From positions 162,378,001-162,442,000 of the forward strand of contig NC_042997.1 in the NCBI RefSeq assembly GCF_006345805.1: a DNA stretch of 64,000 bases, written 5' to 3'. Below the pieces are notes generated by a model that saw only the letters and a list, made by a program, of their open reading frames with translations, searched no databases and was not told the origin of the DNA. The position numbers and the translations under genes were made by a program. How positions within the stretch are numbered: the stretch's first letter is position 1; each line of letters starts with the position of its first letter. Shown here piece by piece: positions 5,634 through 63,187 of the stretch. Origin of the DNA: Octopus sinensis (taxonomy: Eukaryota).

Positions 5634-5634
5634 C

Positions 5635-18275: not shown

Positions 18276-18308
<33 letters not shown>

Positions 18309-36962: not shown

Positions 36963-36965
<3 letters not shown>
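36560..36965 (+). mobile_element. SINE family B
   Basis: Close match to 30921-31300. Confidence 0.9.
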
Positions 36966-40737: not shown

Positions 40738-40772
40738 CCTCTTTCTTTTTCAGCCTATAAAACATACCAACA
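40738..40772 (+). promoter_or_regulatory. 5'UTR intron acceptor (AG at 40752-40753) and 19-nt leader of reflectin-L
   Basis: Polypyrimidine tract CCTCTTTCTTTTTCAG, then CCTATAAAACATACCAACA-ATG. Confidence 0.75.
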
Positions 40773-41807
40773 ATGAACCGTTTTATGAACAGATTCCGTC
40801 CCCAATTTAACAGAAAATACAGAGGATTCATGGAACCAATGAACATGATGTCCATGGACTTCCAAGGCAGATACATGGATTCTTATGGAAGAATGGTAGA
40901 TCCCAAACAATATGAATTTTATGGCAAATATTCTGACAATGACAGATACTATGGTAAATCTATGTACAACTATTACGGTTTCTATGATAACGATAGGTTC
41001 CATAGATATGGTAATTTTATGGACTTCCCAGAAAGGTTTATGGATATGTCCGGATATCAGATGGATATGAATGGAAAATGGATGGATACACAAGGTCAAA
41101 ACTCCAACCCCTACTGGAATATGTTCAGCTCTTCAAGACAAGGCTACAATCCAGGTTACTCTTATGGTCGTAACTGGTTCTTTCCTGAGAGATTCATGGA
41201 CATGTCTCACTACCAGATGGATATGGGTGGCCGATACATGGACAAAAGTGGACGTCACTGCAACCCGTATTACAGCCACTACAGGCGTTATATGTCTCAT
41301 CCACAAATGAATTTCTCTCAAATGCACTACCCTGAGAGATTCATGGATATGTCTAGCTACCAGATGGACATAGGTGGTCGTTATATGGATAAGTGGGGCT
41401 GCCATATTAATCCATTCAGCACTTATTACTTCGGTAAGCAATCATATTATCCTCATAACTTTTGGAGCCAGAGAAAATACATGGACATGTCTTTCAACCA
41501 GATGGATATGCAATTTAATTCGATGGACATGAATAGCCGTAATTGTGACCAACTCCACTATTTCAGAAATTTCGATATGTGGAACAACCAGATGGATTTT
41601 GACGGACACTGGATGAATATGAACAACCAATCTTACCAACCTCCCAGTTTTATCAGGAGTCAAGTTTATTACAACCCTTACCACTTTTACACTTGGATGA
41701 GTAGATATTACAGCCAACCTGAGAAATTTTATGATACAACCAACTATCAAGTGGAATTCGGAGGAAAATGGCCGTCACAAGAATATGAATGTATAACACA
41801 AGAATAA
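40773..41807 (+). CDS. reflectin: Reflectin, 344 aa, uninterrupted CDS (here 'reflectin-L')
   Basis: ORF starts MNRFMNR and carries the reflectin N-terminal motif MEPMNMMSMDFQGRYMDSYGRMVDP. Three canonical PERFMDMSxYQMDxxGxxMD repeats follow, then three degenerate ones. Rich in Met/Tyr/Asp/Arg/Asn, with no Ala and one Leu. Start context CAACAATG; stop TAA 41805-41807; AATAAA at 41853 and 41926. Confidence 0.97.
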   Translation: MNRFMNRFRPQFNRKYRGFMEPMNMMSMDFQGRYMDSYGRMVDPKQYEFYGKYSDNDRYYGKSMYNYYGFYDNDRFHRYGNFMDFPERFMDMSGYQMDMNGKWMDTQGQNSNPYWNMFSSSRQGYNPGYSYGRNWFFPERFMDMSHYQMDMGGRYMDKSGRHCNPYYSHYRRYMSHPQMNFSQMHYPERFMDMSSYQMDIGGRYMDKWGCHINPFSTYYFGKQSYYPHNFWSQRKYMDMSFNQMDMQFNSMDMNSRNCDQLHYFRNFDMWNNQMDFDGHWMNMNNQSYQPPSFIRSQVYYNPYHFYTWMSRYYSQPEKFYDTTNYQVEFGGKWPSQEYECITQE

Positions 41808-41852
41808 TTTTGATCTTTCTCACAACTGGTTTTGAATTGAAATTATACATTT

Positions 41853-41858
41853 AATAAA
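41853..41858 (+). terminator. Candidate polyadenylation signal, reflectin-L
   Basis: AATAAA 46 nt after the stop; alternative at 41926-41931. Confidence 0.5.
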
Positions 41859-43309
41859 CTCCTCTATGACAAATTGTTAATAGCTAAGATTTAGATTACA
41901 CTTCCGATTCATCTTTAAGAGACTTAATAAAATGAAAAATTACATAACTAGTAAATAGAAATGATTCTAGAAAGATAGCAGGTTACAGATAGCTTTATTT
42001 AATGCAACGCAATTTTGGATGATTATATCAGTAAACACCTCTTCTTTAAGAAGAATAATAATTTTATTTGATTTGAGGGACAACAAAGTAAAATTTCATC
42101 AAATTTCTTCAAGTGGATGAAACATCGCGTGACCAAGAAAACAAAAACTCCATATGATGGAATGTTGCTCGAAAAAAAAAGCGCCAACAAAGAAGACCAA
42201 AGGTTTATAAAAGTTTTTAAAATGCAGAACTATCCATATGTTTAAAATGTTGCTGTTTGTAAACCAACCCAATTATTGCCTTTTAAATTATGTATTATCC
42301 ACTTCTAAGCAATAAAAATATTTTGTTTCCATCACTTTAGTGCAGAGTTTTATGTTTACAACACCTAACATTTTCTAACACGAAATAATCATTATGAAGT
42401 TTATAAATAATTGTTTCTAACCGGTGCAAGACCAGAAACTTGAGACAAGAGCTAGTCGATTAAATTGATGTTAGTGCTTGACCCCGAAAGATAAAAAGCA
42501 AAGCTGATCACGTTTAAATTGTATATTATTGGAATTACTCCAATACATTTGTCCTTCAGTTCTCTATGGTATAAAAAAAATGAATACCGTCTCTCCGATA
42601 GAATAATAAAAATAATTTTAATTAGATACAAATCTACTTCTAGAATTTGAAGGCAACCTAAACAAGATATCCCTATCAATGTCTAGGCAAAGTGGTTACT
42701 CTAGAGAAGGTGGCGATTTTAATTTCTAAGGCTGATAACAGGCATAAACGACAAGATTTAAATGCTGTTTCAAGCATACTTTATTCCTGACCCCTTAAAA
42801 ATTACAGTAGACAACAACAGATAAATAATATTTTTACCTAACATTATATCAGAAGCTTTATATTAATTTCTTTTACCAATGTTTGCAATAATTTCCCTTA
42901 TTTATCAGAACCAACATTATCAATTTCGACGGAATTCATGTAAGATGCAACAAAAATTATTTAAAGATTTCAAATACAAGCTCCTACCGATATGTTTCCA
43001 CACAGTCCCCATTTTGCAGGATTTCATTTACAAGGATTTGATCGATCCAAAACTACTGTAGAAAGCACTTACCTAAGGAACTGCACGCTGAAATTGAACC
43101 CAGAACCCAGGACTACTTTGCAAAGTGAGCTTCTTAATCATACAGCCAGCGCCCTCTTCATAGGCGATTTTGGGAAATGTTTAAATAGTTTAGTTGTGTT
43201 GATGTGAGATAAGACTATGTGGGTTATTTCTCGTTGCAACTACTTACTTTTCTTTTTAGTCAAGGTACTTAGCGCCAAACAGAATTTACAAAAAAAGTAA
43301 AACACTATA

Positions 43310-44330
43310 CAAAGTAATATCATCACCGACAACATCATCACATCCTTATGATACTATAAGTCTCAAATGGCACAATATATCCTCACTTTGATAAGGGTCT
43401 TTAGTGTTGACCAAGGAAATGAACTTACCAGATCTTTTTTTAATCAACCAACAAAAGCCATATAAAGAAAACAAGAAATTCTTGATATATCTAACCCATC
43501 CATTCTCCTCTATACGTCATGACACCTTTTCAAAAGACCTTCCCATTTCTTCCCAAAGCTTACGCACGGCTTCATATGCTGATGAAATTGTTGTCACATT
43601 ATATTGCCGTTCCTCAGACACAGTTCCAGCCTTGCATCAAATATACAGAAGCTAAGCTCCAAAGCAACTGCTAGACCCAACCCATCATTTCTCTTATCAA
43701 AAACATCAGATATAATCAACCATTTCAATCAACAACATGAACCATTAACATGTCATGCTCACAGAAGTCTAAAATACTGATTTTAAATTTGAACACAAGG
43801 CCAGGAATTTAGGGGTAGAGGATAAGTCGATTACATCGACCCCAGTGTTCAACTGCTGCTTAATTCATCGACCCCGAAAGGATGGAAGGGAAAGTCGACC
43901 TTAGTGGAATTTGAACTCAGAATGTCGAAACGAACGAAATGCTGGTAAATATTTTGCCCGGTGTGCTAACGATTCTGCCGGCTCACCGCCTTACAGAAGT
44001 CTAAACTATTAGTTGTTACATACAATAACCTTAAAACACTATCCCTTCCACTCAGACCAACCAAGCATAAAGAAAATACTAACACACAAGGGAATAGGTG
44101 CAGCGTTAATAGATTCAAACATTATATCAATAAGTACAGAAGAACTGCGACTAACACACACCGATCAAGTTCATCTTACTCTCTCCTACTGTAACCATCA
44201 CCAGAATCTAAAAATACTCAAGATAGACGGGACAATGACGAAATAGATTGGAGTAATAGATTCCTTACTGTATTGTGAAATGTGCAGTACGGTCCTCTAC
44301 TAGGCAGGGGTATGGTATATCTAGAACAAT
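43310..44330 (+). mobile_element. LINE RT and 3' fragment (I/Jockey-like), split by a SINE
   Basis: LRTASYADEIVV (YADD motif); SINE with TSD inserted at 43774-43992. Confidence 0.45.
43774..43992 (-). mobile_element. SINE family A (tail type 2)
   Basis: 13-bp TSD ACAGAAGTCTAAA (43761-43773 and 43993-44005). Confidence 0.88.
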
Positions 44331-46689
44331 AGATATGTTGATAATCTCTAACTGTTCGGCCGATTACCTCCACACTCTAGATCTGCTCAAGTAGACTTGA
44401 TTGGATCTGCAGAACAACAGCTAAAGATATTAGCATGAACTCTGATAACGGCTGGAGACTTGGAAAAGATCCCCAACCAGATATTTCAAAAATGGGGAGG
44501 TGAAAGTTAGCATGGAGGCAGCAAAGAGGACTGTGAGGAGGTAAGAGACTCAAATGCTGTAATTTTGGTAACAGTAACCATTTGAAAGCCTTCTGCTGTC
44601 TCTCCTACTCTCAACAGCTGCACCCCAAAGTGTTCAGATATGGCTGTGTGGCTTAAGAAATTAGCTCCACAACTTCGTAGTTTCGGTTTCGATCTTATAA
44701 CGCGACGACTTGGCCAAGTCACTTCCATCCTAACCTCAGAATGACCAAATACTTGTAAATAAATTCCGATGGCGGAAGCGATATAGAAGCCCATAGAGAG
44801 ATAGCGATGGATTTAAATTTATCGCCTGGTTTAAATCCACCACCTGGTCCTTAGATATCTTTGTGGGTGGGGGGAGTCTACTCTAAAACAAACATTAGGA
44901 CCAGGTCTTCAATATGAGAATGGCTTCCTTCCATCATCTCTGTGACCCAGAAAAAGCATCATGTATGATGTTCTTCGTCTGCTAAGTCATTAAAATCTCA
45001 AACCGACATAAAAGTAGGTGCAATAGCAGCAATAACATCGCCACTCCCACTGCCATTAATAGCACCATCACCAACACCACCACTACCGCAGCAGCAACAG
45101 CAGTCACCATTATCACGTGTGCTATCACCATCATAACTACTTGTATAGCTTCATTCACCACTTCTACTACTACCACCACCTTCACTATCCTACTACCCTA
45201 CTATACAACTACCATTACCACTACAATCAGAACAACAACAACAACTGTAGTAAATACAACACAACTAAAAACAGTAACAACAACAGGTGGGGACCAATCA
45301 GACAATTACCACTCCCTTCCCAAAGTCAATGTAAACACAGAAAACAGAAATCCCTGACAGAGGCCCTATGTGATTACTCGAAATGCTAGAAAAAGCAGAA
45401 AAATCTTATCCAGCTGACACGTTGTCTTAAAAAGGACATGTTGAATAATGTGGTAATGTATACTTAAAAAGGACGAGATAGGCACAGTAGGAATGCCTTT
45501 GGTCACAGGTCGTTTTTGTCTGGGTTGATCTGGGGCTAAACAATACATATGCACACTGATACATTATCCTATCTTACCCCCACCACACACACAATATATA
45601 ACCAAGATAGGCATATTTTCCCTAAGATAAAAAAAGTTATGGATTATCTGTGGAGAAGAGATAACATACTGTCTAGCCTCTACATGGTGGTTCGATCTGC
45701 TAGAAATAGCAATCAAGTTTCCTCAAAGCACTCTCAATCGTCTTGAAAAACGAAGGATAGGTGGTACAATGTAACGCTAGATAATACTAAGAGACTGGAT
45801 CGATGCGAGTTGAATGCCTTTCATTATAGGTCTTATCAATTATGGAGGCCCTGGGGCTAAACAAAACAGCAGCATTAAACAACAGCAACAGCAACAGAAA
45901 CGGAAACAGCAGCAACCACAGCAGCAACATCCACAGTAGATGCTTCGAGAAACTTAGAAAAGGAGTTTACTCTATAATCTTTCTTGCAAGGATCATTCAA
46001 CTATCAAGCTACCGCTACAAAGCTATCATGCACGCACGCACACACACACACACAAACAAATAATCAAACAAAAACCTCAAGTCACTGAAGTTAAATAAAT
46101 ACTCATTGGCTTCATCTGCATGAACTAGTGCCAACATACTTAGAACAGCGAACATCAAACGTGTGCTGATAGATACTTAAATAGTGAAGAAAGATAACAT
46201 TAGCCCAACGATTAATATAATGTTAATCATTATGACAATCACAGGAGAAGACTTCATACATATTTAGATCTTATTAGACCTCTTCAGCGTAGTATGTGCT
46301 TCACAGTACTTCTCGAAGTACTGATGTGAGAAGCACTAACTAAATGCACAAAATTGTGCCAGTGTAGATGAAAAAAATTAGCATATGAAGAAAAATAAAT
46401 CACTGAGATGGATGTCATCCAATTTTGATTGCAACAGTCAAAATAGTGCAAACAAATTTCATGTGGCAATAAAGATCGTAGAATTGTTAGCACGCCGGAC
46501 AAAATACGTAGGGGTCCACACGTATCACCTACTAATGATTGCCAGGTTTGAGTATCTTGAAATCAAGACATGATGATAAAAAAATAGATTCTACTTTTGG
46601 AATCAGTAATCCCCCAACCCACTTCCCCCTAACCTTCAAATCAGGTAAAAACGTCCTGACGACAGAATACTTGTTGGTTGCGTTATTAT

Positions 46690-47360
46690 TGTGGATCGGC
46701 AGAATATTTTGGGGAGTCGGACAAAATGCCGTACGGATTTAGCTATATTTTTACATACTGAGTTCAAATTACTCACGTAATCAACTTCACTTTATACCCC
46801 TCCGTGGGTGGGGGATAAAATAGGTACCAGGCATGCCTGGAGTTACTGTAATTGGCTAAACCACTCCCCTACAAATTGCCGGCCTTGTGCCTAGATTAGA
46901 GACAAATTTTTCCAAGGTGGTGGTATGACAGAACCATTAGAGCGTCGGATAAAATGCCTTGCATATTTATTTGTCTTCTATGGCCATATTTCAAATCACG
47001 TCGAAATAAAATTTGAACTCAGAAAGTAAAGACCCTAATCCTAGCCCTTCCATCACTTTGGAGTCGATGAAATCGACAAACTCCCTACTTTCAAAATTGC
47101 TGGCCTTGTGTCTAAATTAGAAAGCGTTATTAAAGATGGCTACCTGGTAATACCCTCAAAGCGTAAAAAGACAAAAATAAAATACTTCGTGGTATATATT
47201 CCAGCTCTTTACATTCTGAGTTCAAATCACGCCAAGGTTTACTTCGCTTTCATCTCTTAGGGTCGATAAAATAAAATACTAGTCAAGTATTGTGTTCAAT
47301 GGTGTTGACTAATTCTCTCTCCCACCTCATTATGCTGGCTTTCAGCCTTATGTAGAAACT
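46690..47360 (+). mobile_element. Three head-to-tail degraded SINE-A copies
   Basis: Recurring AAAATGC..., GAGTTCAAAT..., GGGTCGAT... and GGCCTTGTG... at roughly 215-230 bp spacing. Confidence 0.6.
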
Positions 47361-49299
47361 ACTACTTTTGTTGTTGTTGCTGTTATTCTTGTATTCGAGT
47401 TGTACTGACTGTAAACGCAGTAGTAATTTTTTTTGGCAAGTTACTACTCTAAAGAAATTTACGTTTGTTTTCTAGTTTGTCCTTAACATTCAAGAAAGAG
47501 TTTTTTTTCAAAGCCCTCTATGTATACCATTATCAGCGAAAAAAGGGGACTGTTTTTTTCCACATGCGTCACCGTTTTAGCTGGCTACCATTAACAAAAA
47601 GAAAACAGCATTGACGTTTAGAGGGGAGCAGGAAGAGACATCATTGTCAGCGGTGGTAGCAATCTGTCAGGTTCTGTTGGCTGGTTAGAAGGGGAGAAGA
47701 TATAGTTTTACAGGAATTTTTCGGTGAGATCATCACCACCAGAAGACAACCAGAAAAAAAAAAACACCACCCATCAGAAGACAACCACGGACAACATTAC
47801 CACTACCAACAAATTAAGCATGCAAAGTGGCATCAACAACGACAAGTATAAGAAGACTAAAAATAAGAACAGTTTCTGTTATGGTTTTAAGGAAAGAGAC
47901 TTTCCAGTTCTACCAATCCCAGCCAAAAGAAAAAAAAATTACGACGACGGTGAGAATAATGAATATGGCGACGATGACGATGACGATGACGTTGACAACG
48001 ACGAAGACCTGAACGGAAGCGGGGTAGAAAGAGCTAGGAACGATAGCTAAAATCAAAGGCTAAAATCACTATTACAAATGTTTCTATCGCAGTGGCACAA
48101 ACTGGACAAGCCCTTTCTCTCACCACTCTGTCAACCACCAACACCACTACTACCACTGCCGCCGCTTCCGTCGCTGCTGTCGCTGCCACCGCCACTGCCG
48201 CTGACGTCGCTGCTACCGCTGACGTCGCTGCCGCTACTGCCACCGCTGCCACTGCTGCCACCGCTACCGCTGCTGTTATCACTACAACTACTGAAAACAT
48301 TATTTTTCCTTCAACTTCCACCACTGCCAAAGCTGCTGTATTGACTGTGGCCGTTGGAATCTCCAGCAACAACACCAGCAAGGATTACACTGAAAGCACT
48401 GCAAAAAGGTCAGCTTCTTTGCAGGAGCTGCATAAATAATTGGACAAGTGTCTCTGGAGGAGAAACATGTCCTTGAGAGAAGTCGAGAAATACCACATGA
48501 AACACTCAAGAGAACATTAACATACAGATATATATCGGTTAAGAGGCAATGTGTAGGAAATGGGCAGATGTATTCAATCGGAAAACTGTTTGAGAAGGAT
48601 ATGGAGTGACATATCTCGATCTACTCAATATAGCAGCGTTGAAGTAAGACTTCTCACGTGAAATAAACATCAGAGATGCATTTACCCACGCAGAAACTGT
48701 AGGATCTGCTCGGAGGTTTTGCAAGCTCTTCTAATCCATTACAATGCTGTAAACCCTTCCGTATCGTCAGCAGGTATTTCAGGGTTACAAACGTCTCGAC
48801 CGTAGCCTGTGAACTTCACCAGAGTTGGGTAGCGGGGACTAAGCTAGTCTTCACGAATGGAAGAGTTCCACTTGCGGTCTATTATCGACCATAGCCATCT
48901 TGAGCTAGTTTCAGCTGCCGTTCCTTACATAGAAGTGCTCTACTGACCTGCGTAGAAGTACGGATATTTAAAAATATTTCTACCCCTCCACACACACACA
49001 CTACAGACAAACAAAAGAACTCTCCTTAACCGTAAGTATCTTAATGCAGGAGCACACCCATACACTCATTCATACTCGCCTCTTGTCTCTGGTACCTCGT
49101 CGTGCGTAGAGAGCAAGATGAAACCGTTCCGAGAGATTCTTCTCCCTGCGATGAGAAGTAGTGAGAAGAAAAACAAACGCCCAAGTTGAAAACCTGAAAA
49201 TAAGACAGGAAGGCAGAAAATTTTTCATATAACCATACCTCAACACAACCACCATTACTACTACAGCAAAAACTTCACAACAGTTAAAGCAAAATGGCA

Positions 49300-49610
49300 C
49301 TCTGTCGGGAACGACGACGGGTGTTTCAGTTGATTTGATCAGCCGAACAGCCTGCACGTGAAATTAACATGTAAGCGGCTCCAGAGATACGCATACCCTT
49401 AACGTAGTTCTCAAAGAGATTCAGCATGACACAGATTGTGGCAAGGCTGACCCTTTGAATTACTGGTACATCTTATTTTGGCAGTTGAGTTGACTGGAGC
49501 AACGTGGAATAAAGTGTCGTACTCAAGAACACAACGCGCCACCCGGAATCGAACTCACAACCTTACGATCATGAGCTGAATACCTTAACCATGAAGCCAC
49601 GCACCTTACA
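49300..49610 (-). mobile_element. SINE family C
   Basis: Inverted homolog of 2603-2930. Confidence 0.75.
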
Positions 49611-49659
49611 CTCACAACAAGAACAACAACAGCAGAAATTTTTTAAGGACAAAACTAGT

Positions 49660-49840
49660 AATTTTAAGGAGTGGGGTTAGTCGATTCCATCGACCCCAGC
49701 GCTTGACTGTATTTTATCTCATCGACCCGGGAGGACAAAAAACGAAGTTGATTTCAGCAGTCTTTGAACTCAGAACATGAAGTATCGATACAATTACTGC
49801 AAAACAATGTCTCCAACGCCGTAAGGATTCTGTTAACCCA
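49660..49840 (-). mobile_element. SINE family A, degraded
   Basis: Reverse complement contains GAGTTCAAAG...GGGTCGATG...CTGGGGTCGAT. Confidence 0.6.
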
Positions 49841-52860: not shown

Positions 52861-53459
52861 GTAGGAGGAGGTTTCATCGAAGCAAAATTTATATATTAGT
52901 TTGCTGATACCTACAGTTGCGGAAATGACAGAGTATGAGCCAGAGAGAGCTGCAGTGGTGCGATCTGACGTGAACCTTCCAATAAAAGAGACAAGATACA
53001 GGTTGAGAACCACGAGGAGTCGTTTAGCCTAGAGTTTCACATCCCGGACAAGGTCGAAATGATTTGCAGATGTTAAGTAAAACGAAACGAAACTGATTTC
53101 ACTAAATTCCTCAATAGTGGGTGCTCACAAGTGAGAGTTATATGTGAGAAGGTCTAGAAGTCATCTAGATTTACATCAGTATTGGTGGTAATAAGGACGG
53201 AAGAGATTCATGGTGTTGGATAAAGCGGTTGCCAATAATTCTTATCATCATCTTTTGAGGTGTTGGAGATAGTTGACGAGATTGAAATGGCTGAGCGCCT
53301 TGAGAATAGAACACACTATAATGTGTTTTTAAAGAGCGGAGAGAGAAATAGAGAGGGAAAGAAAGAAAGAAGAAAGAAAGAAAGAGAGAGAGAGAGAGGA
53401 GAGAGAGAGAGAAAGACAGACGGGCAGACAGAAACAGAAAGAAACAGAGAGAAAGATTG

Positions 53460-56100
53460 AAGAGTTTGCTGAGGATGTGGACGAGAAGTTCCACGCTACT
53501 CCCTATTCCTCCCCTTCATCGAGCCCACCCTCGCCCGCACTTCCCGCCCCTCATCCGTGTCACCATCCGCTCGACACGCTCTCCCTCTTCTACTCCCTTG
53601 ACCACCAACTCTCCTAACCTTACCTCCTCCTCTCCTCTCTCTGCCCTCCACCCTTCACCCAACCCATTTTCCGCTTCCTTCTTAATTTCAACCAACTCCA
53701 CAATTTCCTCACACACACAAAAAACAAAAACTCCACCTCAACCCTTCACACCCTCTCCCTCCCACCCACCCTCCAACACGCTCCTCCCCTCCACCCTCCA
53801 CCCTCCACACACCCACACGTCCCACTCCCGGACATTCTCACCCTTATCCTATCCCTTCCAAACCATTCCAACCCTCCTCCACACCTCTGCATCCCCTCTT
53901 CCCGACCCCACTCACCCAAACACTCTGCTCCCACGCACTGTGGTCACCATACCACCCAATCTCCCCCTGTACGCTGCCGAGTGTTCACTCCTAAGTAGGG
54001 GTCTTCGCTTCACGCCTCTCACGCCCCACTGCAACGAATTTGAGACCCGCACCGACGTCAGCCAGTTCCTGCGCCGCATCAAACCATGCTCGTTTTTCTA
54101 CACGTCTACACAGTGTCATGACAATCGGGATTGCTTCTCGGAGCTGGGGCGCTGCCCATCCAACTGGACGCCGCCTCCAAGCCAATTCAGTAGCCTAGAC
54201 TTGTTCGTGCACGACTGCAATGCGCTGTTCGACCGATTCACTTTCAAAAATGATCCCTCCGGGCTAACCCCACCCATGCTGAATCAATCTCTTCGTGACC
54301 TCCGTCGCCGCGACGACATCGTCATCAAGCTGACAAAGGTGGAGCGGTGGTGGCGTGGCACGCGGACCTATACAGAGAAGAAGCGCTCAGCCAACTTCGA
54401 AATCCCCTCTTCTATCGTCTCCCTCCCTTCGACCCCACCTCCTCCGACCAACAGCGTGTTCCTCCACCATCCATGACCTCATCTCGTCTTCTGCTCTCCC
54501 CCCACTGCCACCAACCACATCGCCCGAACACCCCGTATCTCCATCATCTATTTCCTTCCCAAAATACATAAACCCAACAACCCTGGCCGTCCCATTGTTT
54601 CTGCCTGTAATTGCCCCACAGAACTCATTTCCAAATACCTTGACCGCATCCGGTCCCCTTTAGTTACTATCCTCCCATCCCACATACACACGACACTAAT
54701 CATGCCCTTCGCCTTTTCAGTTCCTTGTCCTTCCCTTCCGGCCCCTCACACCTCTTCTCCTTGGACACAAATTCCTATACACGGTGATGCCCCACAAAGA
54801 CGGTCTCTTAGCCCTCCAATACTTCCTCGACCGTTGCCCTGACTCCACACCCAGCACCTCCACCCTTCTTAGTCTGGCAGAGCTCATCCTCACCCTCAAC
54901 TGCTTTACATTCGCCGGGGATGGCTACCAACATTAGTCTGGGATCGCGATGGGAATGAGCCCCAATTTCGCCAACCTATTTGTTGGTTACATTGAGGCAC
55001 AATCATTCTCCCAATTCTCTGGGCCGACCCCAGAACTATACGGTCGCTACATAGTCGACTGTATAGGTGCGAGCTCCCTCTTCCGGGAACAACTCTGTCA
55101 CTTCATCTCTTTCCTCTCTACTTTCCACTCCTTTCTCCAATTTACTTCTACCATCTCTAACACTTCGGTTAACATCCTTGATATTTCTCTTACCATTGAT
55201 CTTCCCTCCGACTCTCTCACCACTTCCGCCTTTTTCGAACCCAGATCCTCACCTTACCTCAACTTCTTCTCCTCCCATCCCTTCCACACCAAACGGGCCA
55301 TCCCTTACTCCCAGTTCCTCCGCCTCTGACGCTTGTGAAGCCGGGACCAGGATTTCGAGACCCAGTCCAGTATCTTGCCCGCCTGTTCATGCATCAAGGA
55401 TATCTTCAACCCTTGTTCAAACCGTCCTTGCCTGCGCTCGTCGAATCGATCGCACCACTGCCCTCTCTCCTTCCCCACACCAATCTCCAAACCGACCCTC
55501 TTTCTCCTCTTTTTCCATCCCTCCACCCTACCCCTTCGTCGAAGGATCCTAAGGGCCTTCCGTCGTCTCCAGCTCGATTCCAACACCCACTCCATTTTCC
55601 CCAACCTACCCTTGTCCTCCTTTAAACGCTCCCGGAACCTTCGCGATCTACTGGTCCGTAGTACCTTCTCCTCTTCCTCCCAGCCCCACCCAGATCCTTC
55701 CCGTGCTCGAGATCCCGTTGCCACACCTGCCCCTTCATTACTAACACTACCTCCATCACTGGTTCCAACCAGCACACTCTTTACATCACAAATTCCTTCT
55801 CTTGCACCTCTTCTAGCCTCATATACTGTATTAGATGGAACCTCTGAGGTAAACTATATATAGGTCAGACGGGCCATCGGCTGGCCGATCGGTTCACCAA
55901 ACATCTAAGGCATATTCGGCTACGTTCGAACACCCCTGTCGCCCGTCACTTCCGCTTGGCCAACCACTTCCCCTCTAACACCACGATTCCACACACTCGC
56001 GACTCCGCCTAGATCAGCGTTATATTTTTAATCTACGAACAACTATCCCCCTCGGACTAAACACAACTCCCACCTCCTAATGACTGTCTCTACAACCTCC
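53460..56100 (+). mobile_element. Penelope-like retroelement (Neptune-like), frameshifted RT plus GIY-YIG
   Basis: Fragments LSRGLRFTP, LRDLRRRDDIVIK (before KPADKG), PKIHKPNNPGRPIVSAC, MGMSPNFANLFVGYIE, YGRYIVDC (YIDD), HPFHTKRAIPYSQFLRL, FKRSRNLRDLLVRS, and LYIGQTGHRLADRFTKHL near 55855. Confidence 0.9.
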
Positions 56101-56219
56101 TGCAACAAAGCAACTTTATTTCATTGTTTGTTTTTTATTGCGCCATTTTATATTGTATTAACTTCTTCTTTATCCTCTATCAACCTTTTTTGTTATAATT
56201 TAATATATTTTATCTTATT

Positions 56220-56940
56220 TCTATATACACACATATACACACACACGTACAAACACACGCACCCGTGCACACACATGAAATCACATACAACACACATACA
56301 TGCATATCCACACACATACATCCACACACACACGCACATAAATACGCACACACGCGCATATACGCGCGCGCACACACACACGCATACATAAACACACATA
56401 CACATACATATGCACACGCACGCACATACATACACACACATACCTCCCACACACACTAACACAGACACGCACACAATTACACACACATGGACATAAGCAC
56501 ACACACACATACACGCACACACGCACGTAAGCGCATGCACACAAGCACATACAGGAACGCACATATACCCCCCACACCACCCCATGCACACATGCATACA
56601 GAAACTCACATACACATATATATATACACACATCCATACACATGCACACACACGCACATTCAATATATGCATACACACACATACACACATATGCGCACAC
56701 ACACGCATGCGCACACATACACACACATACATAGACATAGACGCACACACACACGCATACACATACCTATACATACGCACACACACATACACACGCACAC
56801 ACACATGCACATACACAAACATGTACACACATATACACTCACATGAACACACGCACACACAGACACAGGCACACACTGCTCATAAAGTACATGCACACAC
56901 AACATATACATACACGCGCACATACATACTTCAAACTACC
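56220..56940. repeat. Degenerate (CA)/(CATA)-rich tract inside the PLE 3' region
   Basis: Seen directly. Confidence 0.9.
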
Positions 56941-57269
56941 AGTTAAACACCTTTCTACTGACCATTCTCCTACGCACATGTGAAAGGAGACACACAAAAG
57001 ACAGCCACTCCTACCTAAAAGTTCTACTGTAAATTCTTCCTACGACATTAAGCGACACAAAGTCCACTCATTCACACACACATAAACAGCTAAAACCACG
57101 CGCACACACACATACGCACGTACACGTGCTATTATTACACACACAAACACACACACAGACCTGCGCGCATGCACATACCCACACATACACGCACATATCT
57201 CCTCTTGTACTTTTCTGTCTTAAAAAGAATTTTCTCTGCACCCATTCCCTTCCAGTCATTTCAAAATGT

Positions 57270-57460
57270 AACTGCATGTGTATCGTTGGCGATTTTCTTC
57301 CTCCATCTTCCCTTCCTTTGGACTTTTCTCTATTTCCGAAGAAGAGCTTGGCTCGAAACGTTAAATCCTCTTTCCTTCCTTTCCTGAGCGTCTGATAATA
57401 CAGTACTTGCACCACGTACTCGAGTTATTATTTTTCTTTGTTCCTCATCAACACCGGTTC
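57270..57460 (+). mobile_element. PLE pseudo-LTR segment carrying a hammerhead motif
   Basis: Shares ...CTTTCCTGAGCGTC..ATAATAC... with 11950-12110 and 14060-14250. Confidence 0.55.
57332..57366 (+). ncRNA. Minimal hammerhead-like motif, core CCGAAGA, downstream of the PLE body
   Basis: auuu-CCGAAGA-a-gagc-uug-gcuc-GAAA-cguu-aaau; same strand as, and about 1.3 kb 3' of, the PLE at 53460-56100. Confidence 0.62.
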
Positions 57461-57746
57461 TCAAGCGGTCGTAGGGAGACAAACACACACACACACATAT
57501 ATCATTATATACGACGGGCTTCTTTCAGTTTCCGTCATCCCACTCACAAAGCGTTGATCCTTCCGAGGCTATAGTACAAGACACTTGTCCAAGGTGCCAG
57601 GCAGTAGGATTGAACCCTGAACCTTGTGGTTGGGAAGCAAGCTTCTTACCACACAGCCACGCCTGTGCCTATATGTGTGTGTGTGTATGTGTATGTCTGT
57701 CTGTTAGCATGTATGCATGTATGTATCTGTGTGTTTATATATACAC

Positions 57747-57804
<58 letters not shown>

Positions 57805-58031
57805 ATATATACAAACAAGTATATAAATATGCAGTGTGGAGGCCCTTTAAAGCGACCACTATGGGACGTATTATTGCAGATTATGATTATTTAATAACAT
57901 TACCTGTTGGTATGATAAGCAGTTTCAGGAGTTACAATTGCTACAAGATATTTGGATTTTTCATCTCTCGAAGGGAGGATAATTTCAATAAATCAAATAT
58001 TTATTAGTGAAGAGAGAGAGAGAAAGAAAAA

Positions 58032-58097
<66 letters not shown>

Positions 58098-58116
58098 AAA
58101 AAGTAAGAAAGCAAAA

Positions 58117-58159
<43 letters not shown>

Positions 58160-59052
58160 GAGGAAAGAAGGAGAATGATGGAGAAAATGTAGAAGAATGG
58201 TATTTTTAATATTACTTTTAGTTTGAAGCAAAAAAGAAAATCTTCAATCTTCTTAATATTTGCTTTATTATTATTGCTTTTTTAGCTCACATAAGCTATC
58301 AGCAGTGAAAGTCAGATGTTTGACATAACCAGCAGTCGTTCTTCTAGCTGCTCATGAAATCTTCTTTCGAATTATAAACGTTTGTGTGGGCGATTGTAAA
58401 GCAGAAACGTTGAAGCCTCGGTCTGTGTTGCAGTTACGTCATTTTGCAGTGAAGGCCGAAATTTGAGGAAACTGGTGAAAGTCAGCGTTAGAATGTTAGT
58501 AGAATGCCATTCAATTCAATAGCAGTGAAGAGCGGAAAGTCTAAATTTTTCAAGAACTTGCCCTTTCAGCAGAGGGTACAGAACCATGAACATTAAAGTT
58601 TTTCAGTCTTCATGAAAATCAAATTTATCGACGTTCTTGTGTCTTTTATGCCATTTTACGTTGTGAGTTCAAATCGTGCCTGTGGCTGACTTTTCCTTTC
58701 ATACTTCTGATCTGATAAAATAAGTACTAATCAATTATTGGGATTGATTAAATCAATAGCACAGCTCTCCAGATATATAACTTGTACTGATGTCGTTTCT
58801 GTAATGATGATGATGGTGGTAGCTTACCTCTAAATCTCGCCTTCATTCAGCAAGCTAGGTTACTGGGTTCGAATATAGAAACAGTCCTCTTGGCTGCAAT
58901 TTCCTATTGCTTGTAATACCTGTTACTTAAGGTTGGGGCATCAAAAATGTCTTTTCTTCTAGTACCCCAAACCCTTACTATGTCACAGTCCAGTTGACCT
59001 ATGATCATAGACGTTCCAACCTGAACTATCAAGTTTTTTTTTCTGCTTATAG

Positions 59053-59362
59053 CAGTGACTCTCAAACATTTTTTTTAAATCTAGAGATCCCTTTGATTAT
59101 TATTTTATTCTAGTGGACCCCCATAGCCATTCGACATTCAAAAACTAGCTTTATAGAAACTTCTTTTAAAATTCCTATTTTGTTATTCACATATTAACTT
59201 ATGTATGTTGAGCTATGTAAAAACATTAGAGAAAGAAACCTAGCTGTTTCCTGCAATAAGTCGGAAGCAAAATCTTTTCCTAAACCCTTAATATACTACT
59301 GTGGATCCAAATCTTAAAATGAATCTCCTATGGTCATATGGACTCATAGTTGAGAAACACTT
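59053..59362. mobile_element. Possible hAT/Charlie-like MITE
   Basis: CAGTGACTCTCAAAC ... GTTGAGAAACACT termini; TSD not convincing. Confidence 0.4.
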
Positions 59363-60164
59363 AATTATTAGAAATAAAATATCCAATCTCTCTCGTTCCC
59401 CTTTTTTAAGATGGTGGGGGTGTGATCTGAAGAAAATTTGACTTGTATTTCTTGTAGATTTAAGGACCACATTATGACTCACTCGTTTACACATGTTCCA
59501 GTATGCGAAACTATTGCCGCCTGTGTAAACTCTTTATTAATTTCTGTATAAGGAATAAACCTTGAAAGAATCAGGAAATTTATGAAGAAAATGCATCTGT
59601 TCAGATTTTTAAAAATATCTACAAGAGTGTTATTCTAGAATTAAAAATGTTGTAGTAGTAGTAGTAGTAGTAGTAGTAAAAGCAGCAGTAGCAGCAGTTG
59701 CAGTAGTAGTTGCCGTTGTTGTTATTGCTATTTCTTTTGTCATTGCCATCCTTGTTGGTGATGTGGTATTATTTAGCTCCAGGGTAATTCTAACCGAACT
59801 AACAGATGATCAGACATTTGAGTCGTGACCATCCTGTCTTTTCTCAGCAAGGCGTAGGTGTTACCTAGAACTAAATTTAATGCGTGTCTTTCAAATTTCT
59901 TTTTTTTTTTGTATTTGTTTTTCGAGTGGTAGAGAGACAGTGGTGATTTGTGAGAGATATGGCGCTACTATTTCGAGCAGATTGAGTGACCTCCTAGAGG
60001 ATTATACAGTGGCTTGTCCAGGTTCTTCGTAAACTTGCTTGCTTAAATGTAGTTTATTCCTACAGCATCACAATATTTACACGTATACATACATACTAAC
60101 ACACACACATACACACACAAACATACATTCTAACACACTCATAACATATATATACATATAAATA

Positions 60165-60395
60165 AGGCGACGAGCTGGCAGAAACGTTAGCGCGCCGGGC
60201 GAAATGCTTAGCGATATTTCGTCTGCCGTTACGTTTTGAGTTCAAATTCCACCGAGGTCGACTTTGCCTTTCATTCTTTCGGGGTCGATAAATAAAGAAC
60301 CAGTTACGCACTGGGGTCGATGTAATCGACTTAATCCGTTTGTCTGTCCTTGTTTGTCCCCTCTATGTTTAGCCCCTTGTGGGCAATAACGAAAT
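60165..60395 (+). mobile_element. SINE family A (tail type 1)
   Basis: Close match to 9451-9686. Confidence 0.9.
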
Positions 60396-61240
60396 ATATA
60401 TATAAATATACATACATACAGTACATATATATATATATATGTATATATGCACACACACACTCACACACACACGTCAAACTAGTGTCCTATAGATGAGTGA
60501 TTGAAGCAATTCTAAGAATCCACATGTCAACCACATAATGTAACTTATCATTTTATACTTTATATCAGGCTCATATCAGGCTTAAGTAAACTTTGTGAAT
60601 AAAGATTCTTCGTCAGTATTGAAATCACCGGTTAGCAGCTGGCTGGCTGGCATAAACTCAACTGTTTCTATATTTGAAAACTTTTACCATGTATACATTT
60701 GATATTCTCGTTAACATTATTGCGATGCTGTTTCCTAGTAGAAGCTATTGTTATAACCACTGACTTAAGATGCCAGCAGTCATACATAACATTGCTTTTT
60801 TCTACATGCTGACAAAACAAAGCAACTGATAAGGTATTTTTTTTACCTAAACTAATCAGCCACAACTAATGATTGTTCAATTAACTTAATGACATCGTCG
60901 ACCATAGATTTCCAGGTAAGTAACATGGTTAATTTTACTAGTGTAAACAGAGCGATGCATGATGTTGATAGTAACATTTTCTTTTTCTAGGAAAAGATGC
61001 TGCTACAAGTGGTCTGAGGCAGTCGATTATGGTTAGCGATGCTAGAGAAAATGTTAGTGTATGTTCTCCTTGTTGTCTAGTCATTGAAGAATGGTAAATT
61101 AAACAACAGTAATATTCTATTGATGATCAAATCCATTTTATCTGTTCTCTTTATTCGATAGAAATTATCTATCTCAAATATGCTGTCATCGTTTAACTCT
61201 GATTTAAACATGCCATTTAGTTTTAATAAATTATCTCGTT

Positions 61241-61410
61241 TAGCAGCATTTCGTCAGTCTTTACGTTCTCAGTTCAAATTCCACTGAGGCCGACTTTGCC
61301 TTTCATCCTTTCGGGGTCGATAAAATAAGTTCCAGTTCAGCACTGGAGTCGATGTGATCGACTTACTCTCTTCTCGAACTTGTTGGCCCTATGCCAAAAT
61401 TTGACACCGA
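61241..61410 (+). mobile_element. SINE family A, 5'-truncated
   Basis: B-box, core and type-2 tail. Confidence 0.75.
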
Positions 61411-61932
61411 TATATAATCTCGCTTTCTATATCAATACTGGCTACGCCATATTTTTCTCATGAATTTTTTAATTGACTTTATATATTCATAAAAGTTGAC
61501 TAAAAGCAAATTTTAAAAAAAGCAGAAATGCAGTTGTTTATCACAACCAAATTAATAACCAAGAAGACGGAAATGAAGTGAAATAAGCCAATTCTTTAAT
61601 CAATTTTTCTGTTTATAAAAGAATATAAATTCAAGTTTTAACATATCAATTTGAAATTCCTAGCAAATACAATACATACTGTTGCACTCCCAAACCTGGC
61701 TTTTCGCATTTATTTCAGAGAATAAATATTGTAAATAAATTAATTTAAAATATTATATTTTTCCACTTACAATATTTTCTCATGCGGTTTTCGGGCATTG
61801 TAATATTTATAGAATTTCGATTAATACACAGTTGGAACATCTAGTGTTGGAAAGTTCGAGTCCATTAGGCCCCAATTGTTGTTTTATTTCTTTACATAGA
61901 TTTTACATTGAACATAATTAATAAAAGTTAAT

Positions 61933-61938
61933 TTTATT
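61933..61938 (-). terminator. Candidate polyadenylation signal, reflectin-R
   Basis: AATAAA on - about 150 nt after the stop, followed by U-rich sequence; alternative at 61888-61883. Confidence 0.5.
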
Positions 61939-62089
61939 AATTTGAACACAGGAAATTTCAGTTGATATGGGATTGAATTTACTAACAATAAAACAATTTC
62001 ATTTTCAAAAACATAATATTATTACGCTTCTTTCGATTCTCATTAAATTTCAACAGTATAGCCAGTTAATTTTCTTAAAATCTTGATGC

Positions 62090-63187
62090 TTAGAAGTAGT
62101 ATTCGTTCCAATGGTCAAAGTGGGTCATATGACGACCATTCATATCCATCCACTGACCTCCAAAATCCATCTGATAATTGGACATATCAAACCATCTATG
62201 GCCTCCATAGAAGTAAGGACTGTAGTTGAAGAAGTGGTACCTGCTGTGGTAATTATAGGGAGACATTGAATGGAATTCATAATCCATATCATACCATCTC
62301 TCTGGGTTGTTGTAGTATCTTTGGCCCCAGCTGTAACTATGATAAGGGTAGTAGTGGTGATGTCTGCCGTGATAGCTGTAGAAGGGTGTGCAATGACGGC
62401 TATACATATCCATCCAGCGGCCATCAAAATCCATTTGATAGTTTGTCATATCAAAGTATCTCTCTGGGTAGTTGTAATACCTTTGGCCCCAGCTGTAGTT
62501 ATAATAAGGGTAGTTATGGTAGTACCTGCCATAGTTGGTGTAGAAAGGAGTTGAAAAACGGCCATACATATCCATCCAGCGGCCATACATGTCCATCTGA
62601 TAGCCGGACATATCCATGAATCTCTCGGGATAGTGCATATAGTAGAAATTCATATATGGATAATACATATAACGCCTGTAATAGTTGTAATAAGGGTTGC
62701 AGTGACGTCCATATCTGTCCATGTATCGGCCATACACGTCCATTTGATAGTGGGACATGTCCATGAATCTCTCAGGATAGAACCAGTTACGACCATAGCG
62801 GTAGCCAGGGTAGTAGCCATGTTTTGAAGAGTTGAACATATACCAGTAGGGGCTGGAGTGGTGTCCGTGCATGTCCATCCATCTTCCATACATATCCATC
62901 TGATAACTGGACATATCCATAAACCTCTCAGGGAAGTCCATGAAATAACCGTATCTATGGAACCTATCGTTATCATAGAAACCGTAATAGTTGTACATAG
63001 ATTTACCATAGTATCTATCATTATCAGAATATCTACCATAGAATTCATAGAATCTGGGATCTACCATTCTTCCATAAGAATCCATGTATCTGCCTTGAAA
63101 ATCCATGGACATCACGCTCATTGGTTCCATGATTCCTCTGTATTTTCTGGCGAAATGATGACGGAATTTGTTCATGAGACGGTTCAT
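62090..63187 (-). CDS. reflectin: Reflectin, 365 aa, uninterrupted CDS (here 'reflectin-R')
   Basis: From Met34 of the 62090-63286 ORF: MNRLMNK..., N-terminal motif MEPMSVMSMDFQGRYMDSYGRMVDP, four PER[F/Y][M/F]DM motifs and a split fifth. The first 33 codons of the track ORF are a translated polypyrimidine tract (FLFFSF), so the true start is placed at 63187, matching the MNR start of the paralog. AATAAA on - at 61938-61933. Confidence 0.96.
   Translation of the reverse strand: MNRLMNKFRHHFARKYRGIMEPMSVMSMDFQGRYMDSYGRMVDPRFYEFYGRYSDNDRYYGKSMYNYYGFYDNDRFHRYGYFMDFPERFMDMSSYQMDMYGRWMDMHGHHSSPYWYMFNSSKHGYYPGYRYGRNWFYPERFMDMSHYQMDVYGRYMDRYGRHCNPYYNYYRRYMYYPYMNFYYMHYPERFMDMSGYQMDMYGRWMDMYGRFSTPFYTNYGRYYHNYPYYNYSWGQRYYNYPERYFDMTNYQMDFDGRWMDMYSRHCTPFYSYHGRHHHYYPYHSYSWGQRYYNNPERWYDMDYEFHSMSPYNYHSRYHFFNYSPYFYGGHRWFDMSNYQMDFGGQWMDMNGRHMTHFDHWNEYYF

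What the first reader, a model, noticed from the sequence alone, without database searches (positions are those of the whole stretch)
40773..63187. Convergent pair of reflectin genes with shared architecture
Seen: two Met/Tyr/Asp-rich ORFs built from an N-terminal MEPM...MDFQGRYMDSYGRMVDP motif and repeated PERFMDMSxYQMD motifs. They face each other 20.3 kb apart with only TEs recognisable between them. Established: this is the cephalopod-specific reflectin family, whose self-assembly produces tunable iridescence and broadband reflectance in iridocytes and leucophores; reflectins are often clustered. Inference: this is part of a reflectin cluster formed by inverted duplication, and these paralogs may be uncharacterised. 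Both contain FMDMSGYQ, one residue from the YMDMSGYQ core peptide described for reflectins.
Basis: partly seen in the sequence, partly recalled or inferred. Interest (0 to 1): 0.85.

Follow-up and report, generated by a model that had tools for sequence, protein, structure and literature searches.

The report
Two octopus reflectin genes, tail-to-tail
The window, from an Octopus sinensis chromosome, holds two intact genes of the well-known cephalopod reflectin family facing each other 20.3 kb apart; both are already gene models in the public assembly, so this is a correct but ordinary finding.

Summary
ORF A (40773-41807, +, 344 aa) and ORF B (62090-63187, -, 365 aa) are convergent, with 20,282 bp between their stop codons. 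Both are reflectins: they have the N-terminal motif, 4-6 canonical repeats, the typical composition, and E-values of 1e-58 to 1e-77 to named squid and cuttlefish reflectins.

The window is Octopus sinensis CM016859.1, about 162.378-162.442 Mb. Both genes are already called there. A is identical in O. vulgaris and 94% identical to an O. bimaculoides 'uncharacterized protein'.

B is canonical, with 20% Tyr, pI 8.4 and a decapod-like C-terminus. A belongs to a derived octopod subtype. It has lost about two 54-aa units and many Tyr and Arg residues. It shares a degenerate, acidic C-terminal extension with an Argonauta hians protein. It remains under purifying selection (dN/dS about 0.26), so it is not a pseudogene.

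'Inverted duplication' cannot be shown: DNA similarity stops at the CDS and dS is about 0.56. No annotated gene lies between the two, only transposon remnants and simple repeats. A third reflectin probably starts just left of window position 1.

A conserved splice-acceptor-like tract 19 nt before each ATG suggests a 5'UTR intron. The family, its clustering and octopus members are all published, so interest is low.

The parts
40773..41807 (+). Reflectin gene A: complete CDS in one exon, 344 aa, derived 'A-type' octopod reflectin
   Evidence: ORF. Called gene in O. sinensis and O. vulgaris assemblies. 94% identical to O. bimaculoides XP_014779614. dN/dS 0.30 against O. bimaculoides and 0.26 against another octopod.
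40741..40753 (+). Polypyrimidine tract plus CAG ending 19 nt before A's ATG; putative 3' splice acceptor of a 5'UTR intron
   Evidence: Conserved with the same spacing in A, B, A. hians and L006, while the rest of the upstream DNA is unalignable. Inference; no RNA data.
40830..40904 (+). A: conserved N-terminal reflectin motif MEPMNMMSMDFQGRYMDSYGRMVDP (residues 20-44)
   Evidence: Matches the query motif used in the 2026 preprint.
41028..41402 (+). A: three canonical reflectin repeats PERFMDMSxYQMDxxG(K/R)(W/Y)MD at 41028-41099, 41184-41255 and 41331-41402, with their linkers
   Evidence: Regex and coordinates.
41469..41624 (+). A: two degenerate repeats (YMDMSFNQMDMQFNSMDMNSR and FDMWNNQMDFDGHWMNMN)
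41715..41804 (+). A: Met-less terminal pseudo-repeat and acidic tail (PEKFYDTTNYQVEFGGKWPSQEYECITQE), shared with the A. hians protein and another octopod
   Evidence: Alignments. dN/dS 0.24-0.27 over the last 55 codons.
41808..62089 (.). 20,282-bp interval between the two stop codons: no annotated gene, only transposon remnants, SINE-like copies and microsatellites
   Evidence: Only the queried gene is listed in L003 and L009. ORFs have no above-threshold Pfam hit. Repeats.
53487..56200 (+). Degraded Penelope-like retroelement (RT-like ORF fragments, CCHH-like linker, GIY-YIG motif at about 55848-55920); 53487-55881 is absent from O. bimaculoides
   Evidence: GIY-YIG E = 0.0011, below the Pfam cut-off. 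The element type is assigned from my own knowledge of its architecture.
62090..63187 (-). Reflectin gene B: complete CDS in one exon, 365 aa, canonical reflectin
   Evidence: ORF. Called gene with exactly this product in GCA_006345805.1. 54% identity and E = 5e-77 to Sepia officinalis reflectin 1.
63056..63130 (-). B: N-terminal reflectin motif MEPMSVMSMDFQGRYMDSYGRMVDP (residues 20-44)
62132..62932 (-). B: repeat array. Canonical repeats at 62861-62932, 62705-62776, 62558-62629, 62396-62467 and 62132-62203; a degenerate unit (PERWYDMDYEF) at 62273-62305
62285..62634 (-). B: internal 162-nt (54-aa) tandem repeat, about 2.2 copies at 78-80% identity; this is the repeat-plus-linker unit
   Evidence: Tandem Repeats Finder.
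63207..63223 (-). Polypyrimidine tract plus CAG ending 19 nt before B's ATG; putative 3' splice acceptor
1..249 (-). Probable upstream or first-exon region of a third reflectin gene lying just outside the window's left edge
   Evidence: 82% identity to nt 32-277 of L006/L007, which lie about 140 nt upstream of the ATG of a 423/440-aa reflectin. The segment is unique in the window and the alignment is cut by the window edge. Inference.

Best explanation
These are two intact, selectively maintained paralogous reflectin genes of Octopus sinensis (CM016859.1, about 162.42-162.44 Mb). They lie tail-to-tail and are separated by 20.3 kb of gene-free, repeat-bearing DNA.

Each has its whole CDS in one exon. 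That exon is probably preceded by a non-coding first exon, because a conserved acceptor-like tract ends 19 nt before the ATG.

B is a canonical reflectin. It has the N-terminal motif, five Met/Asp repeats alternating with Tyr/Arg/His-rich linkers, net charge about +5 and pI 8.4. Its C-terminus resembles that of squid and cuttlefish reflectins.

A belongs to a derived, octopod-specific subtype. Relative to the 447-aa Argonauta hians homologue it lacks about 111 residues, which is roughly two 54-aa units. In the shared 227-residue block it carries 34 lineage-specific substitutions against 11 in B; 14 of the 34 are Tyr losses and 7 are Arg losses. It is nearly neutral (pI 7.7). It ends in a Met-less pseudo-repeat plus an acidic tail, which it shares with A. 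hians.

Inferred mechanism, from established reflectin biochemistry and not tested here: both are intrinsically disordered block copolymers. They condense when linker charge is neutralised, producing the high-refractive-index material of iridophore platelets, leucophore granules and eye tissue. B probably acts as a bulk structural component. A, with fewer aromatic and cationic 'stickers', more likely acts as a co-assembling modifier.

The duplication is old: dS is about 0.56, against 0.10 between O. sinensis and O. bimaculoides. I favour a duplication that predates the Octopus/Argonauta split, followed by concerted evolution of the 5' 630 nt.
For: Identity. Homology to named reflectins at E = 3.8e-58 to 5.2e-77. 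N-terminal motif and repeats present. Composition: Y+M+R+N+G+D is 54% in A and 62% in B; A+I+L+K is 4.7% and 1.9%. AlphaFold gives no confident fold, mean pLDDT 36. Only 14 representative relatives exist among 1.84 billion proteins.

Locus. The window is 100% identical to O. sinensis L003 over 21,035 nt. Both genes are called in that assembly.

Functionality of A. The ORF is intact in O. sinensis, O. vulgaris (0 nt differences) and O. bimaculoides, and in the part recovered from a fourth octopod, whose contig starts inside the gene. dN/dS is 0.30, and 0.26 against the fourth octopod, including the odd tail. The CDS is 96.4% identical between species, while flanks are 89-93% identical.

Asymmetric evolution. 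34 versus 11 lineage-specific substitutions, binomial p = 0.0008. Architecture comparison with A. hians.

B's C-terminus. GRHMTHFDHWNEYYF resembles the decapod ends GRHMDPSWSNMHDNHNYWF and GRYMDPWWNEHHFNHYY (sequences).

Acceptor-like tract..

Literature. Concerted evolution and single-exon CDS are reported for argonaut reflectins.
Against: - There are no expression, protein or localisation data for either gene, so the optical role and the division of labour between A and B are inference.
- The splice-acceptor reading has no RNA support. Published text calls argonaut reflectins 'single exon genes'.
- The timing of the duplication is unresolved. dS(A-B) = 0.555 is lower than dS(B-Ahi) = 0.765 and dS(A-Ahi) = 0.955, which on its face favours a post-Argonauta duplication. 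Quartet site counts are inconclusive, 16:12:12 at third positions.
- The AlphaFold alignment had only 10 sequences, so low pLDDT is weak evidence for disorder.
- B's orthologue in O. bimaculoides and O. vulgaris could not be reached with the available flanks.
Confidence: 0.85

Rival explanations
1. The pair arose as a single, relatively recent inverted duplication. The present convergent layout is then the direct product of that event.
For: The genes are paralogues in opposite orientation. Synonymous distance A-B (0.555) is smaller than either gene's distance to the A. hians homologue. A and B can each be derived from an A. hians-like 447-aa ancestor by one deletion or truncation.
Against: There is no homology outside the CDS and no inverted-repeat arms. 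dS of 0.56 is about five times the O. sinensis / O. bimaculoides divergence, so the event is not recent. A shares a derived C-terminal extension with A. hians, whereas B keeps the decapod-like end, which points to an older split plus 5' gene conversion. Orientation at birth cannot be recovered.
Confidence: 0.25
2. Gene A is a decaying, non-functional reflectin relic whose ORF survives by chance.
For: A has lost about two repeat units, 14 Tyr and 7 Arg in the shared block. Its last repeats are degenerate (MD to MN; a Met-less motif), and it evolves about three times faster than B at the protein level.
Against: The full 344-codon ORF is intact in three Octopus species, and the recovered 242 codons are intact in a further octopod. 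dN/dS is 0.26-0.30, uniformly, including the degenerate C-terminal half. The CDS is more conserved than its flanks. The derived tail is also retained in A. hians.
Confidence: 0.05
3. The ORFs are chance products of low-complexity or microsatellite-rich DNA, or of an assembly artefact that duplicated one gene.
For: The window is full of simple repeats that generate long spurious ORFs, for example YIYIYI and CVCVCV ORFs.
Against: The repeats are structured, with 0 of 20,000 shuffles reaching the observed count. E-values to curated reflectins reach 1e-77. A and B are only 58% identical, so they are not collapsed or duplicated copies. The A locus is colinear in three independent assemblies.
Confidence: 0.01

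Closest known systems
Decapod reflectins: Sepia officinalis reflectin 1 (I0JGV0), Doryteuthis opalescens reflectin-like A2 (A0A088MI16), Loligo forbesii methionine-rich repeat protein 1 (Q8MPM4), Acanthosepion pharaonis reflectin 14
   Same: Same N-terminal motif, the same PER(Y/W/F)MDMSxYQMDMxGRWMD repeats alternating with Tyr/Arg/His linkers, and the same skewed composition. B also has a similar C-terminal end. 51-61% identity over 53-76% of the query.
   Different: The octopus repeats start with F (FMDMSxYQ) rather than Y, W or G as in the published protopeptide variants. Both proteins are longer (344-365 aa against 211-284). B is much richer in Tyr (20%). A has the octopod-specific degenerate C-terminal extension and fewer Tyr and Arg.
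Octopus bimaculoides 'uncharacterized protein LOC106875838' (XP_014779614 / A0A0L8GN02)
   Same: Direct orthologue of A: 344 aa, 94% aa and 96.4% nt identity, with a syntenic, colinear locus.
   Different: 21 aa differences. The O. sinensis locus carries two extra blocks of about 2.4-2.5 kb in the downstream interval.
Argonauta hians GAB1597764 (447 aa, 'uncharacterized protein LOC115215290')
   Same: Shares the N-terminal 227-residue block with both genes. It shares B's fourth repeat and the WYDMDYE-like unit, and A's degenerate C-terminal half and acidic tail. It has the same acceptor-like tract 19 nt before the ATG.
   Different: It combines what A and B each retain only in part. No partner gene lies within +/-10 kb.
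Argonauta argo reflectin cluster (Yoshida et al. 2022, PMC9635652) and the clustered reflectins of O. bimaculoides, Architeuthis, Euprymna and Doryteuthis
   Same: Small clusters of reflectin genes with single-exon CDS. One member is inverted and sequence-divergent, and there is evidence of gene conversion among members.
   Different: Here spacing is wide (20 kb and about 41 kb), the pair is convergent rather than tandem, and the members are only 58% identical. The three argonaut copies are 97% identical.

Membership tests
Reflectin | Conserved N-terminal motif (MEPMSRM(T/S)MDFQGRYMDSxGRMVDP) | tested here: met
   Residues 20-44 of both proteins. Nearly invariant columns in the alignment with named reflectins. 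The motif is as used in the 2026 preprint.
Reflectin | Several internal repeats fitting [M/F]D(X)5MD(X)5MD(X)3/4 | tested here: met
   A has 5 matches counting overlaps (4 distinct units) and B has 6 (5 distinct units). No shuffle out of 20,000 reached these counts.
Reflectin | Skewed composition: rich in Y, M, R, N, G, D and nearly devoid of A, I, L, K | tested here: met
   Y+M+R+N+G+D is 54.1% in A and 61.9% in B. A+I+L+K is 4.7% in A and 1.9% in B. A is at the weak end because of R-to-K changes.
Reflectin | Significant sequence similarity to experimentally described reflectins | tested here: met
   E = 3.8e-58 (A) and 5.2e-77 (B) to D. opalescens A2 and S. officinalis reflectin 1.
Reflectin | Restricted to coleoid cephalopods | tested here: met
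   The window is from an Octopus sinensis chromosome. Only 14 representative relatives exist among 1.84 billion proteins. All named hits are cephalopod proteins.
Reflectin | Cationic linkers and net positive charge that gate assembly | tested here: inconclusive
   B: net +4.6 at pH 7, pI 8.36, 24 His, so the feature is met. A: net +1.4, pI 7.66, so it is borderline.
Reflectin | Intrinsic disorder with no stable globular fold | tested here: met
   AlphaFold2 on B gives mean pLDDT 36.1, pTM 0.20 and no residue at or above 70. The alignment was shallow, so this is supportive only. No PDB relative was found.
Reflectin | Expression in reflective tissues (iridophores, leucophores, eye, light organ) | not testable with these tools
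   No RNA-seq access. Gene models exist in the assembly annotation, but their supporting evidence is not visible here.
Reflectin | Self-assembly into high-refractive-index particles or platelets | not testable with these tools
   Requires recombinant protein and biophysics.
Clustered reflectin locus | Three or more reflectin genes in close linkage | tested here: inconclusive
   Two genes lie in 73 kb of sequence examined. A third is inferred just left of the window from 82% identity of window 1-249 to the upstream region of another octopod's reflectin gene.
Inverted segmental duplication | Inverted homology extending beyond the coding sequence into the flanks | tested here: not met
   blastn similarity runs only from -5 to +622 relative to the ATG. 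Sensitive short-word comparison of 1.5 kb upstream regions finds nothing except the acceptor tract. Downstream regions are unalignable.

The most novel reading that the evidence does not exclude
Gene A, with its A. hians and other octopod orthologues, may define an undescribed octopod-specific reflectin subfamily. It is Tyr- and Arg-depleted and near-neutral. Its terminal repeats have lost the Met-Asp dyads, and it carries a conserved acidic tail (...NYQVEFGGKWPSQEYE...). It has been held under purifying selection since before the Octopus/Argonauta split. Such a protein might act as a regulator or capping partner of canonical reflectin condensation, or have a non-optical role, rather than serving as a bulk reflector protein.
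Probability: 0.2. Interest if true: 0.45.

Novelty: already known. Interest (0 to 1): 0.2.

Why it matters
Reflectins underlie cephalopod structural colour and serve as templates for bio-optical materials. Octopus members are the least classified; the 2026 preprint says they are 'not currently well-classified'.

This locus adds no new kind of gene. It does give a clean natural contrast between two linked paralogues. One is canonical and very Tyr-rich. The other has shed aromatic and cationic residues and two repeat units while staying under selection. Comparing their assembly would test which residues drive reflectin condensation.

The conserved acceptor-like tract, if confirmed, would correct the usual 'intronless' description of these genes.

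Tried and rejected
- Pfam scan of A and B: no family, because Pfam has no reflectin model. This is not evidence against membership.
- PDB sequence search: no relatives.
- Rfam and tRNA scans of the whole window: nothing.
- Pfam on ORFs of the interval: nothing above threshold. Only sub-threshold GIY-YIG hits appeared.
- Self-blast of the interval: only 7% is repeated within the window. A 64-kb window is too small to judge TE content.
- Search for shared promoter motifs among the upstream regions of A, B, A. hians and L006: only the acceptor tract.
- A's TATAAAA at -19 was rejected as a promoter. It is too close to the ATG and is not conserved in B.
- Quartet analysis to time the duplication: inconclusive.
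- Profile search for further octopus paralogues, to map the cluster: only 13 hits and no additional O. sinensis or O. bimaculoides proteins, so cluster extent could not be tested that way.
- Logan contigs L005-L008 were considered as transcript evidence and rejected. They contain the acceptor tract and upstream DNA and are colinear with the genome for 2.3 kb, so they look genomic.
- Albertin et al. 2015 could not be opened. Its cluster statement is cited second-hand through.
- No paper mentions the gene or protein accessions.


Full report
**1.

The ORF listing and my own translation give ORF A at 40773-41807 (+, 344 aa). ORF B runs from the ATG at 63187 down to the stop at 62090 (-, 365 aa). 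The mechanical ORF for B extends to a TTG at 63286. The genes are convergent, with 20,282 bp (41808-62089) between their stop codons.

Both proteins carry MEPM..MSMDFQGRYMDSYGRMVDP at residues 20-44. Both have three exact PERFMDMSxYQMD units at residues 86, 138 and 187, followed by more degenerate units. FMDMSGYQ occurs once in each.

The canonical reflectin core [M/F]D-x5-MD-x5-MD occurs 5 times in A and 6 times in B, counting overlaps. None of 20,000 residue shuffles reached more than one occurrence. A and B are 58% identical, E = 4e-157. tblastn finds no further copy in the 64-kb window or in the 10 kb beyond B's 5' end.

**2. Where the window comes from**

Locus L003 from Octopus sinensis GCA_006345805.1, chromosome CM016859.1, is 100% identical to window 30773-51807. 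The window is therefore about 162,378,001-162,442,000 of that record.

Both A and B are called genes with exactly these products in that assembly. A's CDS is identical in O. vulgaris OX597814.1, with 0 nt differences. Its orthologue in O. bimaculoides is XP_014779614 / A0A0L8GN02, annotated 'uncharacterized protein LOC106875838'. That orthologue is 94% identical at the aa level and sits in a colinear locus.

**3. Family membership**

Pfam has no reflectin model, so its silence is uninformative. Direct searches match named reflectins:
- Sepia officinalis reflectin 1: E = 5.2e-77 to B.
- Doryteuthis opalescens reflectin-like A2: E = 3.8e-58 to A and 1.3e-60 to B.
- Loligo forbesii methionine-rich repeat protein 1.
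- Acanthosepion pharaonis reflectin 14.

Composition is typical. Y+M+R+N+G+D is 54% in A and 62% in B. A+I+L+K is 4.7% and 1.9%. AlphaFold2 gives no confident fold for B, with mean pLDDT 36. No PDB relative exists.

An exhaustive HMMER search of 1.84 billion representative proteins finds only 14 relatives, as expected for a cephalopod-restricted family. The YMDMSGYQ 'protopeptide' is documented in PMC10552760, citing Guan et al. 2017. The octopus F-initial version lies just outside the published variant set.

**4. The two genes are not equivalent**

B is canonical. It has 20.3% Tyr, 24 His, net +4.6 and pI 8.4. It has five repeat units. It contains an internal 162-nt (54-aa) tandem repeat at 62285-62634. 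Its C-terminus (GRHMTHFDHWNEYYF) resembles the decapod ends listed.

A has 12.5% Tyr, net +1.4 and pI 7.7.

I used the 447-aa Argonauta hians protein GAB1597764 as a reference (alignment). In the shared 227-residue block, A has 34 lineage-specific substitutions against 11 in B (binomial p = 0.0008). Of the 34, 14 are Tyr losses and 7 are Arg losses (5 to Lys, 1 to Cys, 1 to Gly).

Relative to A. hians, A lacks about 111 residues, roughly two 54-aa units. B lacks the C-terminal extension. A. hians has both.

A's last repeats are degenerate: FDMWNNQMDFDGHWMNMN, then a Met-less FYDTTNYQVEFGGKWPSQEYECITQE. This extension is shared with A. hians and with a Logan contig from another octopod (L005).

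**5. A is not a pseudogene**

- dN/dS between O. sinensis and O. bimaculoides is 0.30 (dS 0.09).
- Against the more distant octopod it is 0.26 (dS 0.32). The value is the same in the repeat region, the degenerate C-terminal half and the last 55 codons.
- The CDS is 96.4% identical between species, while flanking DNA is 89-93% identical.

**6. Origin of the pair**

DNA similarity between A and B runs only from -5 to about +622 of the CDS, at 86%. Neither upstream nor downstream flanks align. An inverted segmental duplication therefore cannot be demonstrated.

dS(A-B) is 0.555, about five times the O. sinensis / O. bimaculoides value. It is nevertheless lower than dS(B-A. hians) at 0.765 and dS(A-A. 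hians) at 0.955. Two scenarios fit:
- a duplication after the Argonauta split from an A. hians-like gene; or
- an older duplication whose 5' 630 nt have been homogenised by gene conversion.

I lean towards the second scenario for two reasons. A shares a derived extension with A. hians while B keeps the decapod-like terminus. Concerted evolution is also documented for argonaut reflectins. Quartet site counts do not resolve the question.

**7. Gene structure**

A polypyrimidine tract ending in CAG lies exactly 19 nt before the ATG in four genes: O. sinensis A (40741-40753), its O. bimaculoides orthologue, B (63223-63207, minus) and A. hians. It lies 18 nt before the ATG of the reflectin on L006. 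The surrounding upstream DNA is otherwise unalignable.

The simplest reading is a conserved 3' splice site, implying a non-coding first exon. This is inference without RNA data. It qualifies the 'single exon' description in the literature. Candidate poly(A) signals lie 46-120 nt downstream of A's stop and 150-200 nt downstream of B's stop.

**8. The interval**

The assembly annotation lists no other gene in L003 or L009. ORFs in the interval have no above-threshold Pfam domain. The features that can be identified are:
- A degraded Penelope-like element at about 53.5-56.2 kb. It has RT-like ORF fragments, a CCHH-like linker and a GIY-YIG motif (Pfam E = 0.0011, sub-threshold). Of this, 53487-55881 is missing from O. 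bimaculoides.
- A 2,515-bp block at 45030-47544, also missing from O. bimaculoides.
- A 170-250-bp interspersed repeat present in at least six copies in the window.
- Long (AC)n and (AGAA)n arrays.

'Only TEs' is therefore a fair but only partly verifiable description.

**9. Cluster context**

Window 1-249 (minus strand) is 82% identical to the region about 140-385 nt upstream of the ATG of a 423/440-aa reflectin on contigs L006/L007 from another octopod. It is unique within the window, and the alignment is cut by the window edge. A third reflectin gene therefore probably begins just left of the window on the minus strand, head-to-head with A at about 41 kb.

Published work already describes clustered reflectins in the following:
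- O. bimaculoides.
- Argonauta argo, with one inverted, divergent member.
- Architeuthis.
- Euprymna.
- Doryteuthis.

A 2026 preprint compiles 8 O. bimaculoides and 9 O. vulgaris reflectins.

**10. Mechanism (inferred)**

From established reflectin biochemistry, these proteins are disordered block copolymers. Their cationic, His-, Arg- and Tyr-rich linkers hold them apart until charge neutralisation lets the Met-rich repeats condense into high-refractive-index assemblies. The supporting sources are Crookes 2004 and the Morse-lab work cited.

B fits this model fully. A has fewer aromatic and cationic residues and an acidic tail, so it is more likely a co-assembling modifier than a bulk component. 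None of this was tested here.

**11. Verdict**

The sighting is correct and the family assignment is correct. The claims of novelty and of inverted duplication are overstated. Both genes already exist as public gene models in a well-known, well-published family. The A-type subfamily and the 5'UTR acceptor are modest, checkable additions.

Noticed in passing
window 1-249 (minus strand): 82% identity to the upstream region of a 423/440-aa reflectin gene from another octopod (L006/L007). The segment is unique in the window and the alignment is cut by the window edge. This implies a third reflectin gene starting about 140 nt left of the window.
   Followed up: partly
window 40741-40753 (+) and 63207-63223 (-); L002 about 9969-9981; L006 about 385-396: A polypyrimidine-CAG tract ends 19 nt (18 nt in L006) before the ATG of every octopod reflectin gene examined, in otherwise unalignable upstream DNA. 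It is probably a 3' splice site of a 5'UTR intron.
   Followed up: partly
window 53487-56200 (+): GC-rich (53%), C-skewed block with RT-like ORF fragments, a CCHH-like linker and a GIY-YIG motif (GKLYIGQTGHRLADRFTKHLRHI). It looks like a degraded Penelope-like retroelement. 53487-55881 is absent from O. bimaculoides.
   Followed up: partly
window 45030-47544: A 2,515-bp block is present in O. sinensis but cleanly absent from the colinear O. bimaculoides locus. No clear target-site duplication or terminal repeats were seen.
   Followed up: partly
window 43772-43993, 60148-60402, 61238-61416, 9455-9623, 23653-23840, 23966-24166: A 170-250-bp interspersed (SINE-like) repeat occurs in at least six copies at 75-83% identity. 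ARAGORN detects no tRNA-like head.
   Followed up: no
window 31335-31676 (-) and 32946-33416 (-): Two ORFs have sub-threshold GIY-YIG matches (E = 0.002-0.003), probably further Penelope-like element remnants. Nearby 30934-31292 and 36573-36965 form an 84%-identical inverted repeat pair.
   Followed up: no
window 62285-62634 (-): A 162-nt (54-aa) tandem repeat lies inside gene B, with 2.2 copies at 78-80% identity. The same unit length accounts for the deletion of about 111 aa in gene A.
   Followed up: yes
L009 6695-8305 (about 1.7-3.3 kb upstream of B, outside the window): An intact 536-aa LINE-type reverse transcriptase ORF (Pfam RVT_1, E = 3e-30) lies on the strand opposite to B.
   Followed up: no
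proteins P0014, P0015, P0017, P0019, P0020: Large proteins of 757-1270 aa carry internal arrays of reflectin-like repeats (for example PERYMDLSRYTMDFQGRFMD) embedded in unrelated Met/Pro/Gly-rich and acidic regions. They may form a reflectin-domain-containing family distinct from classical reflectins.
   Followed up: no
window 5327-5814, 56193-56946, 17692-18378 and elsewhere: Long microsatellite or low-complexity tracts generate spurious ORFs of 100-230 aa (poly-His/poly-Asp, CVCV/THTH, YIYI) on both strands. They are not genes.
   Followed up: no
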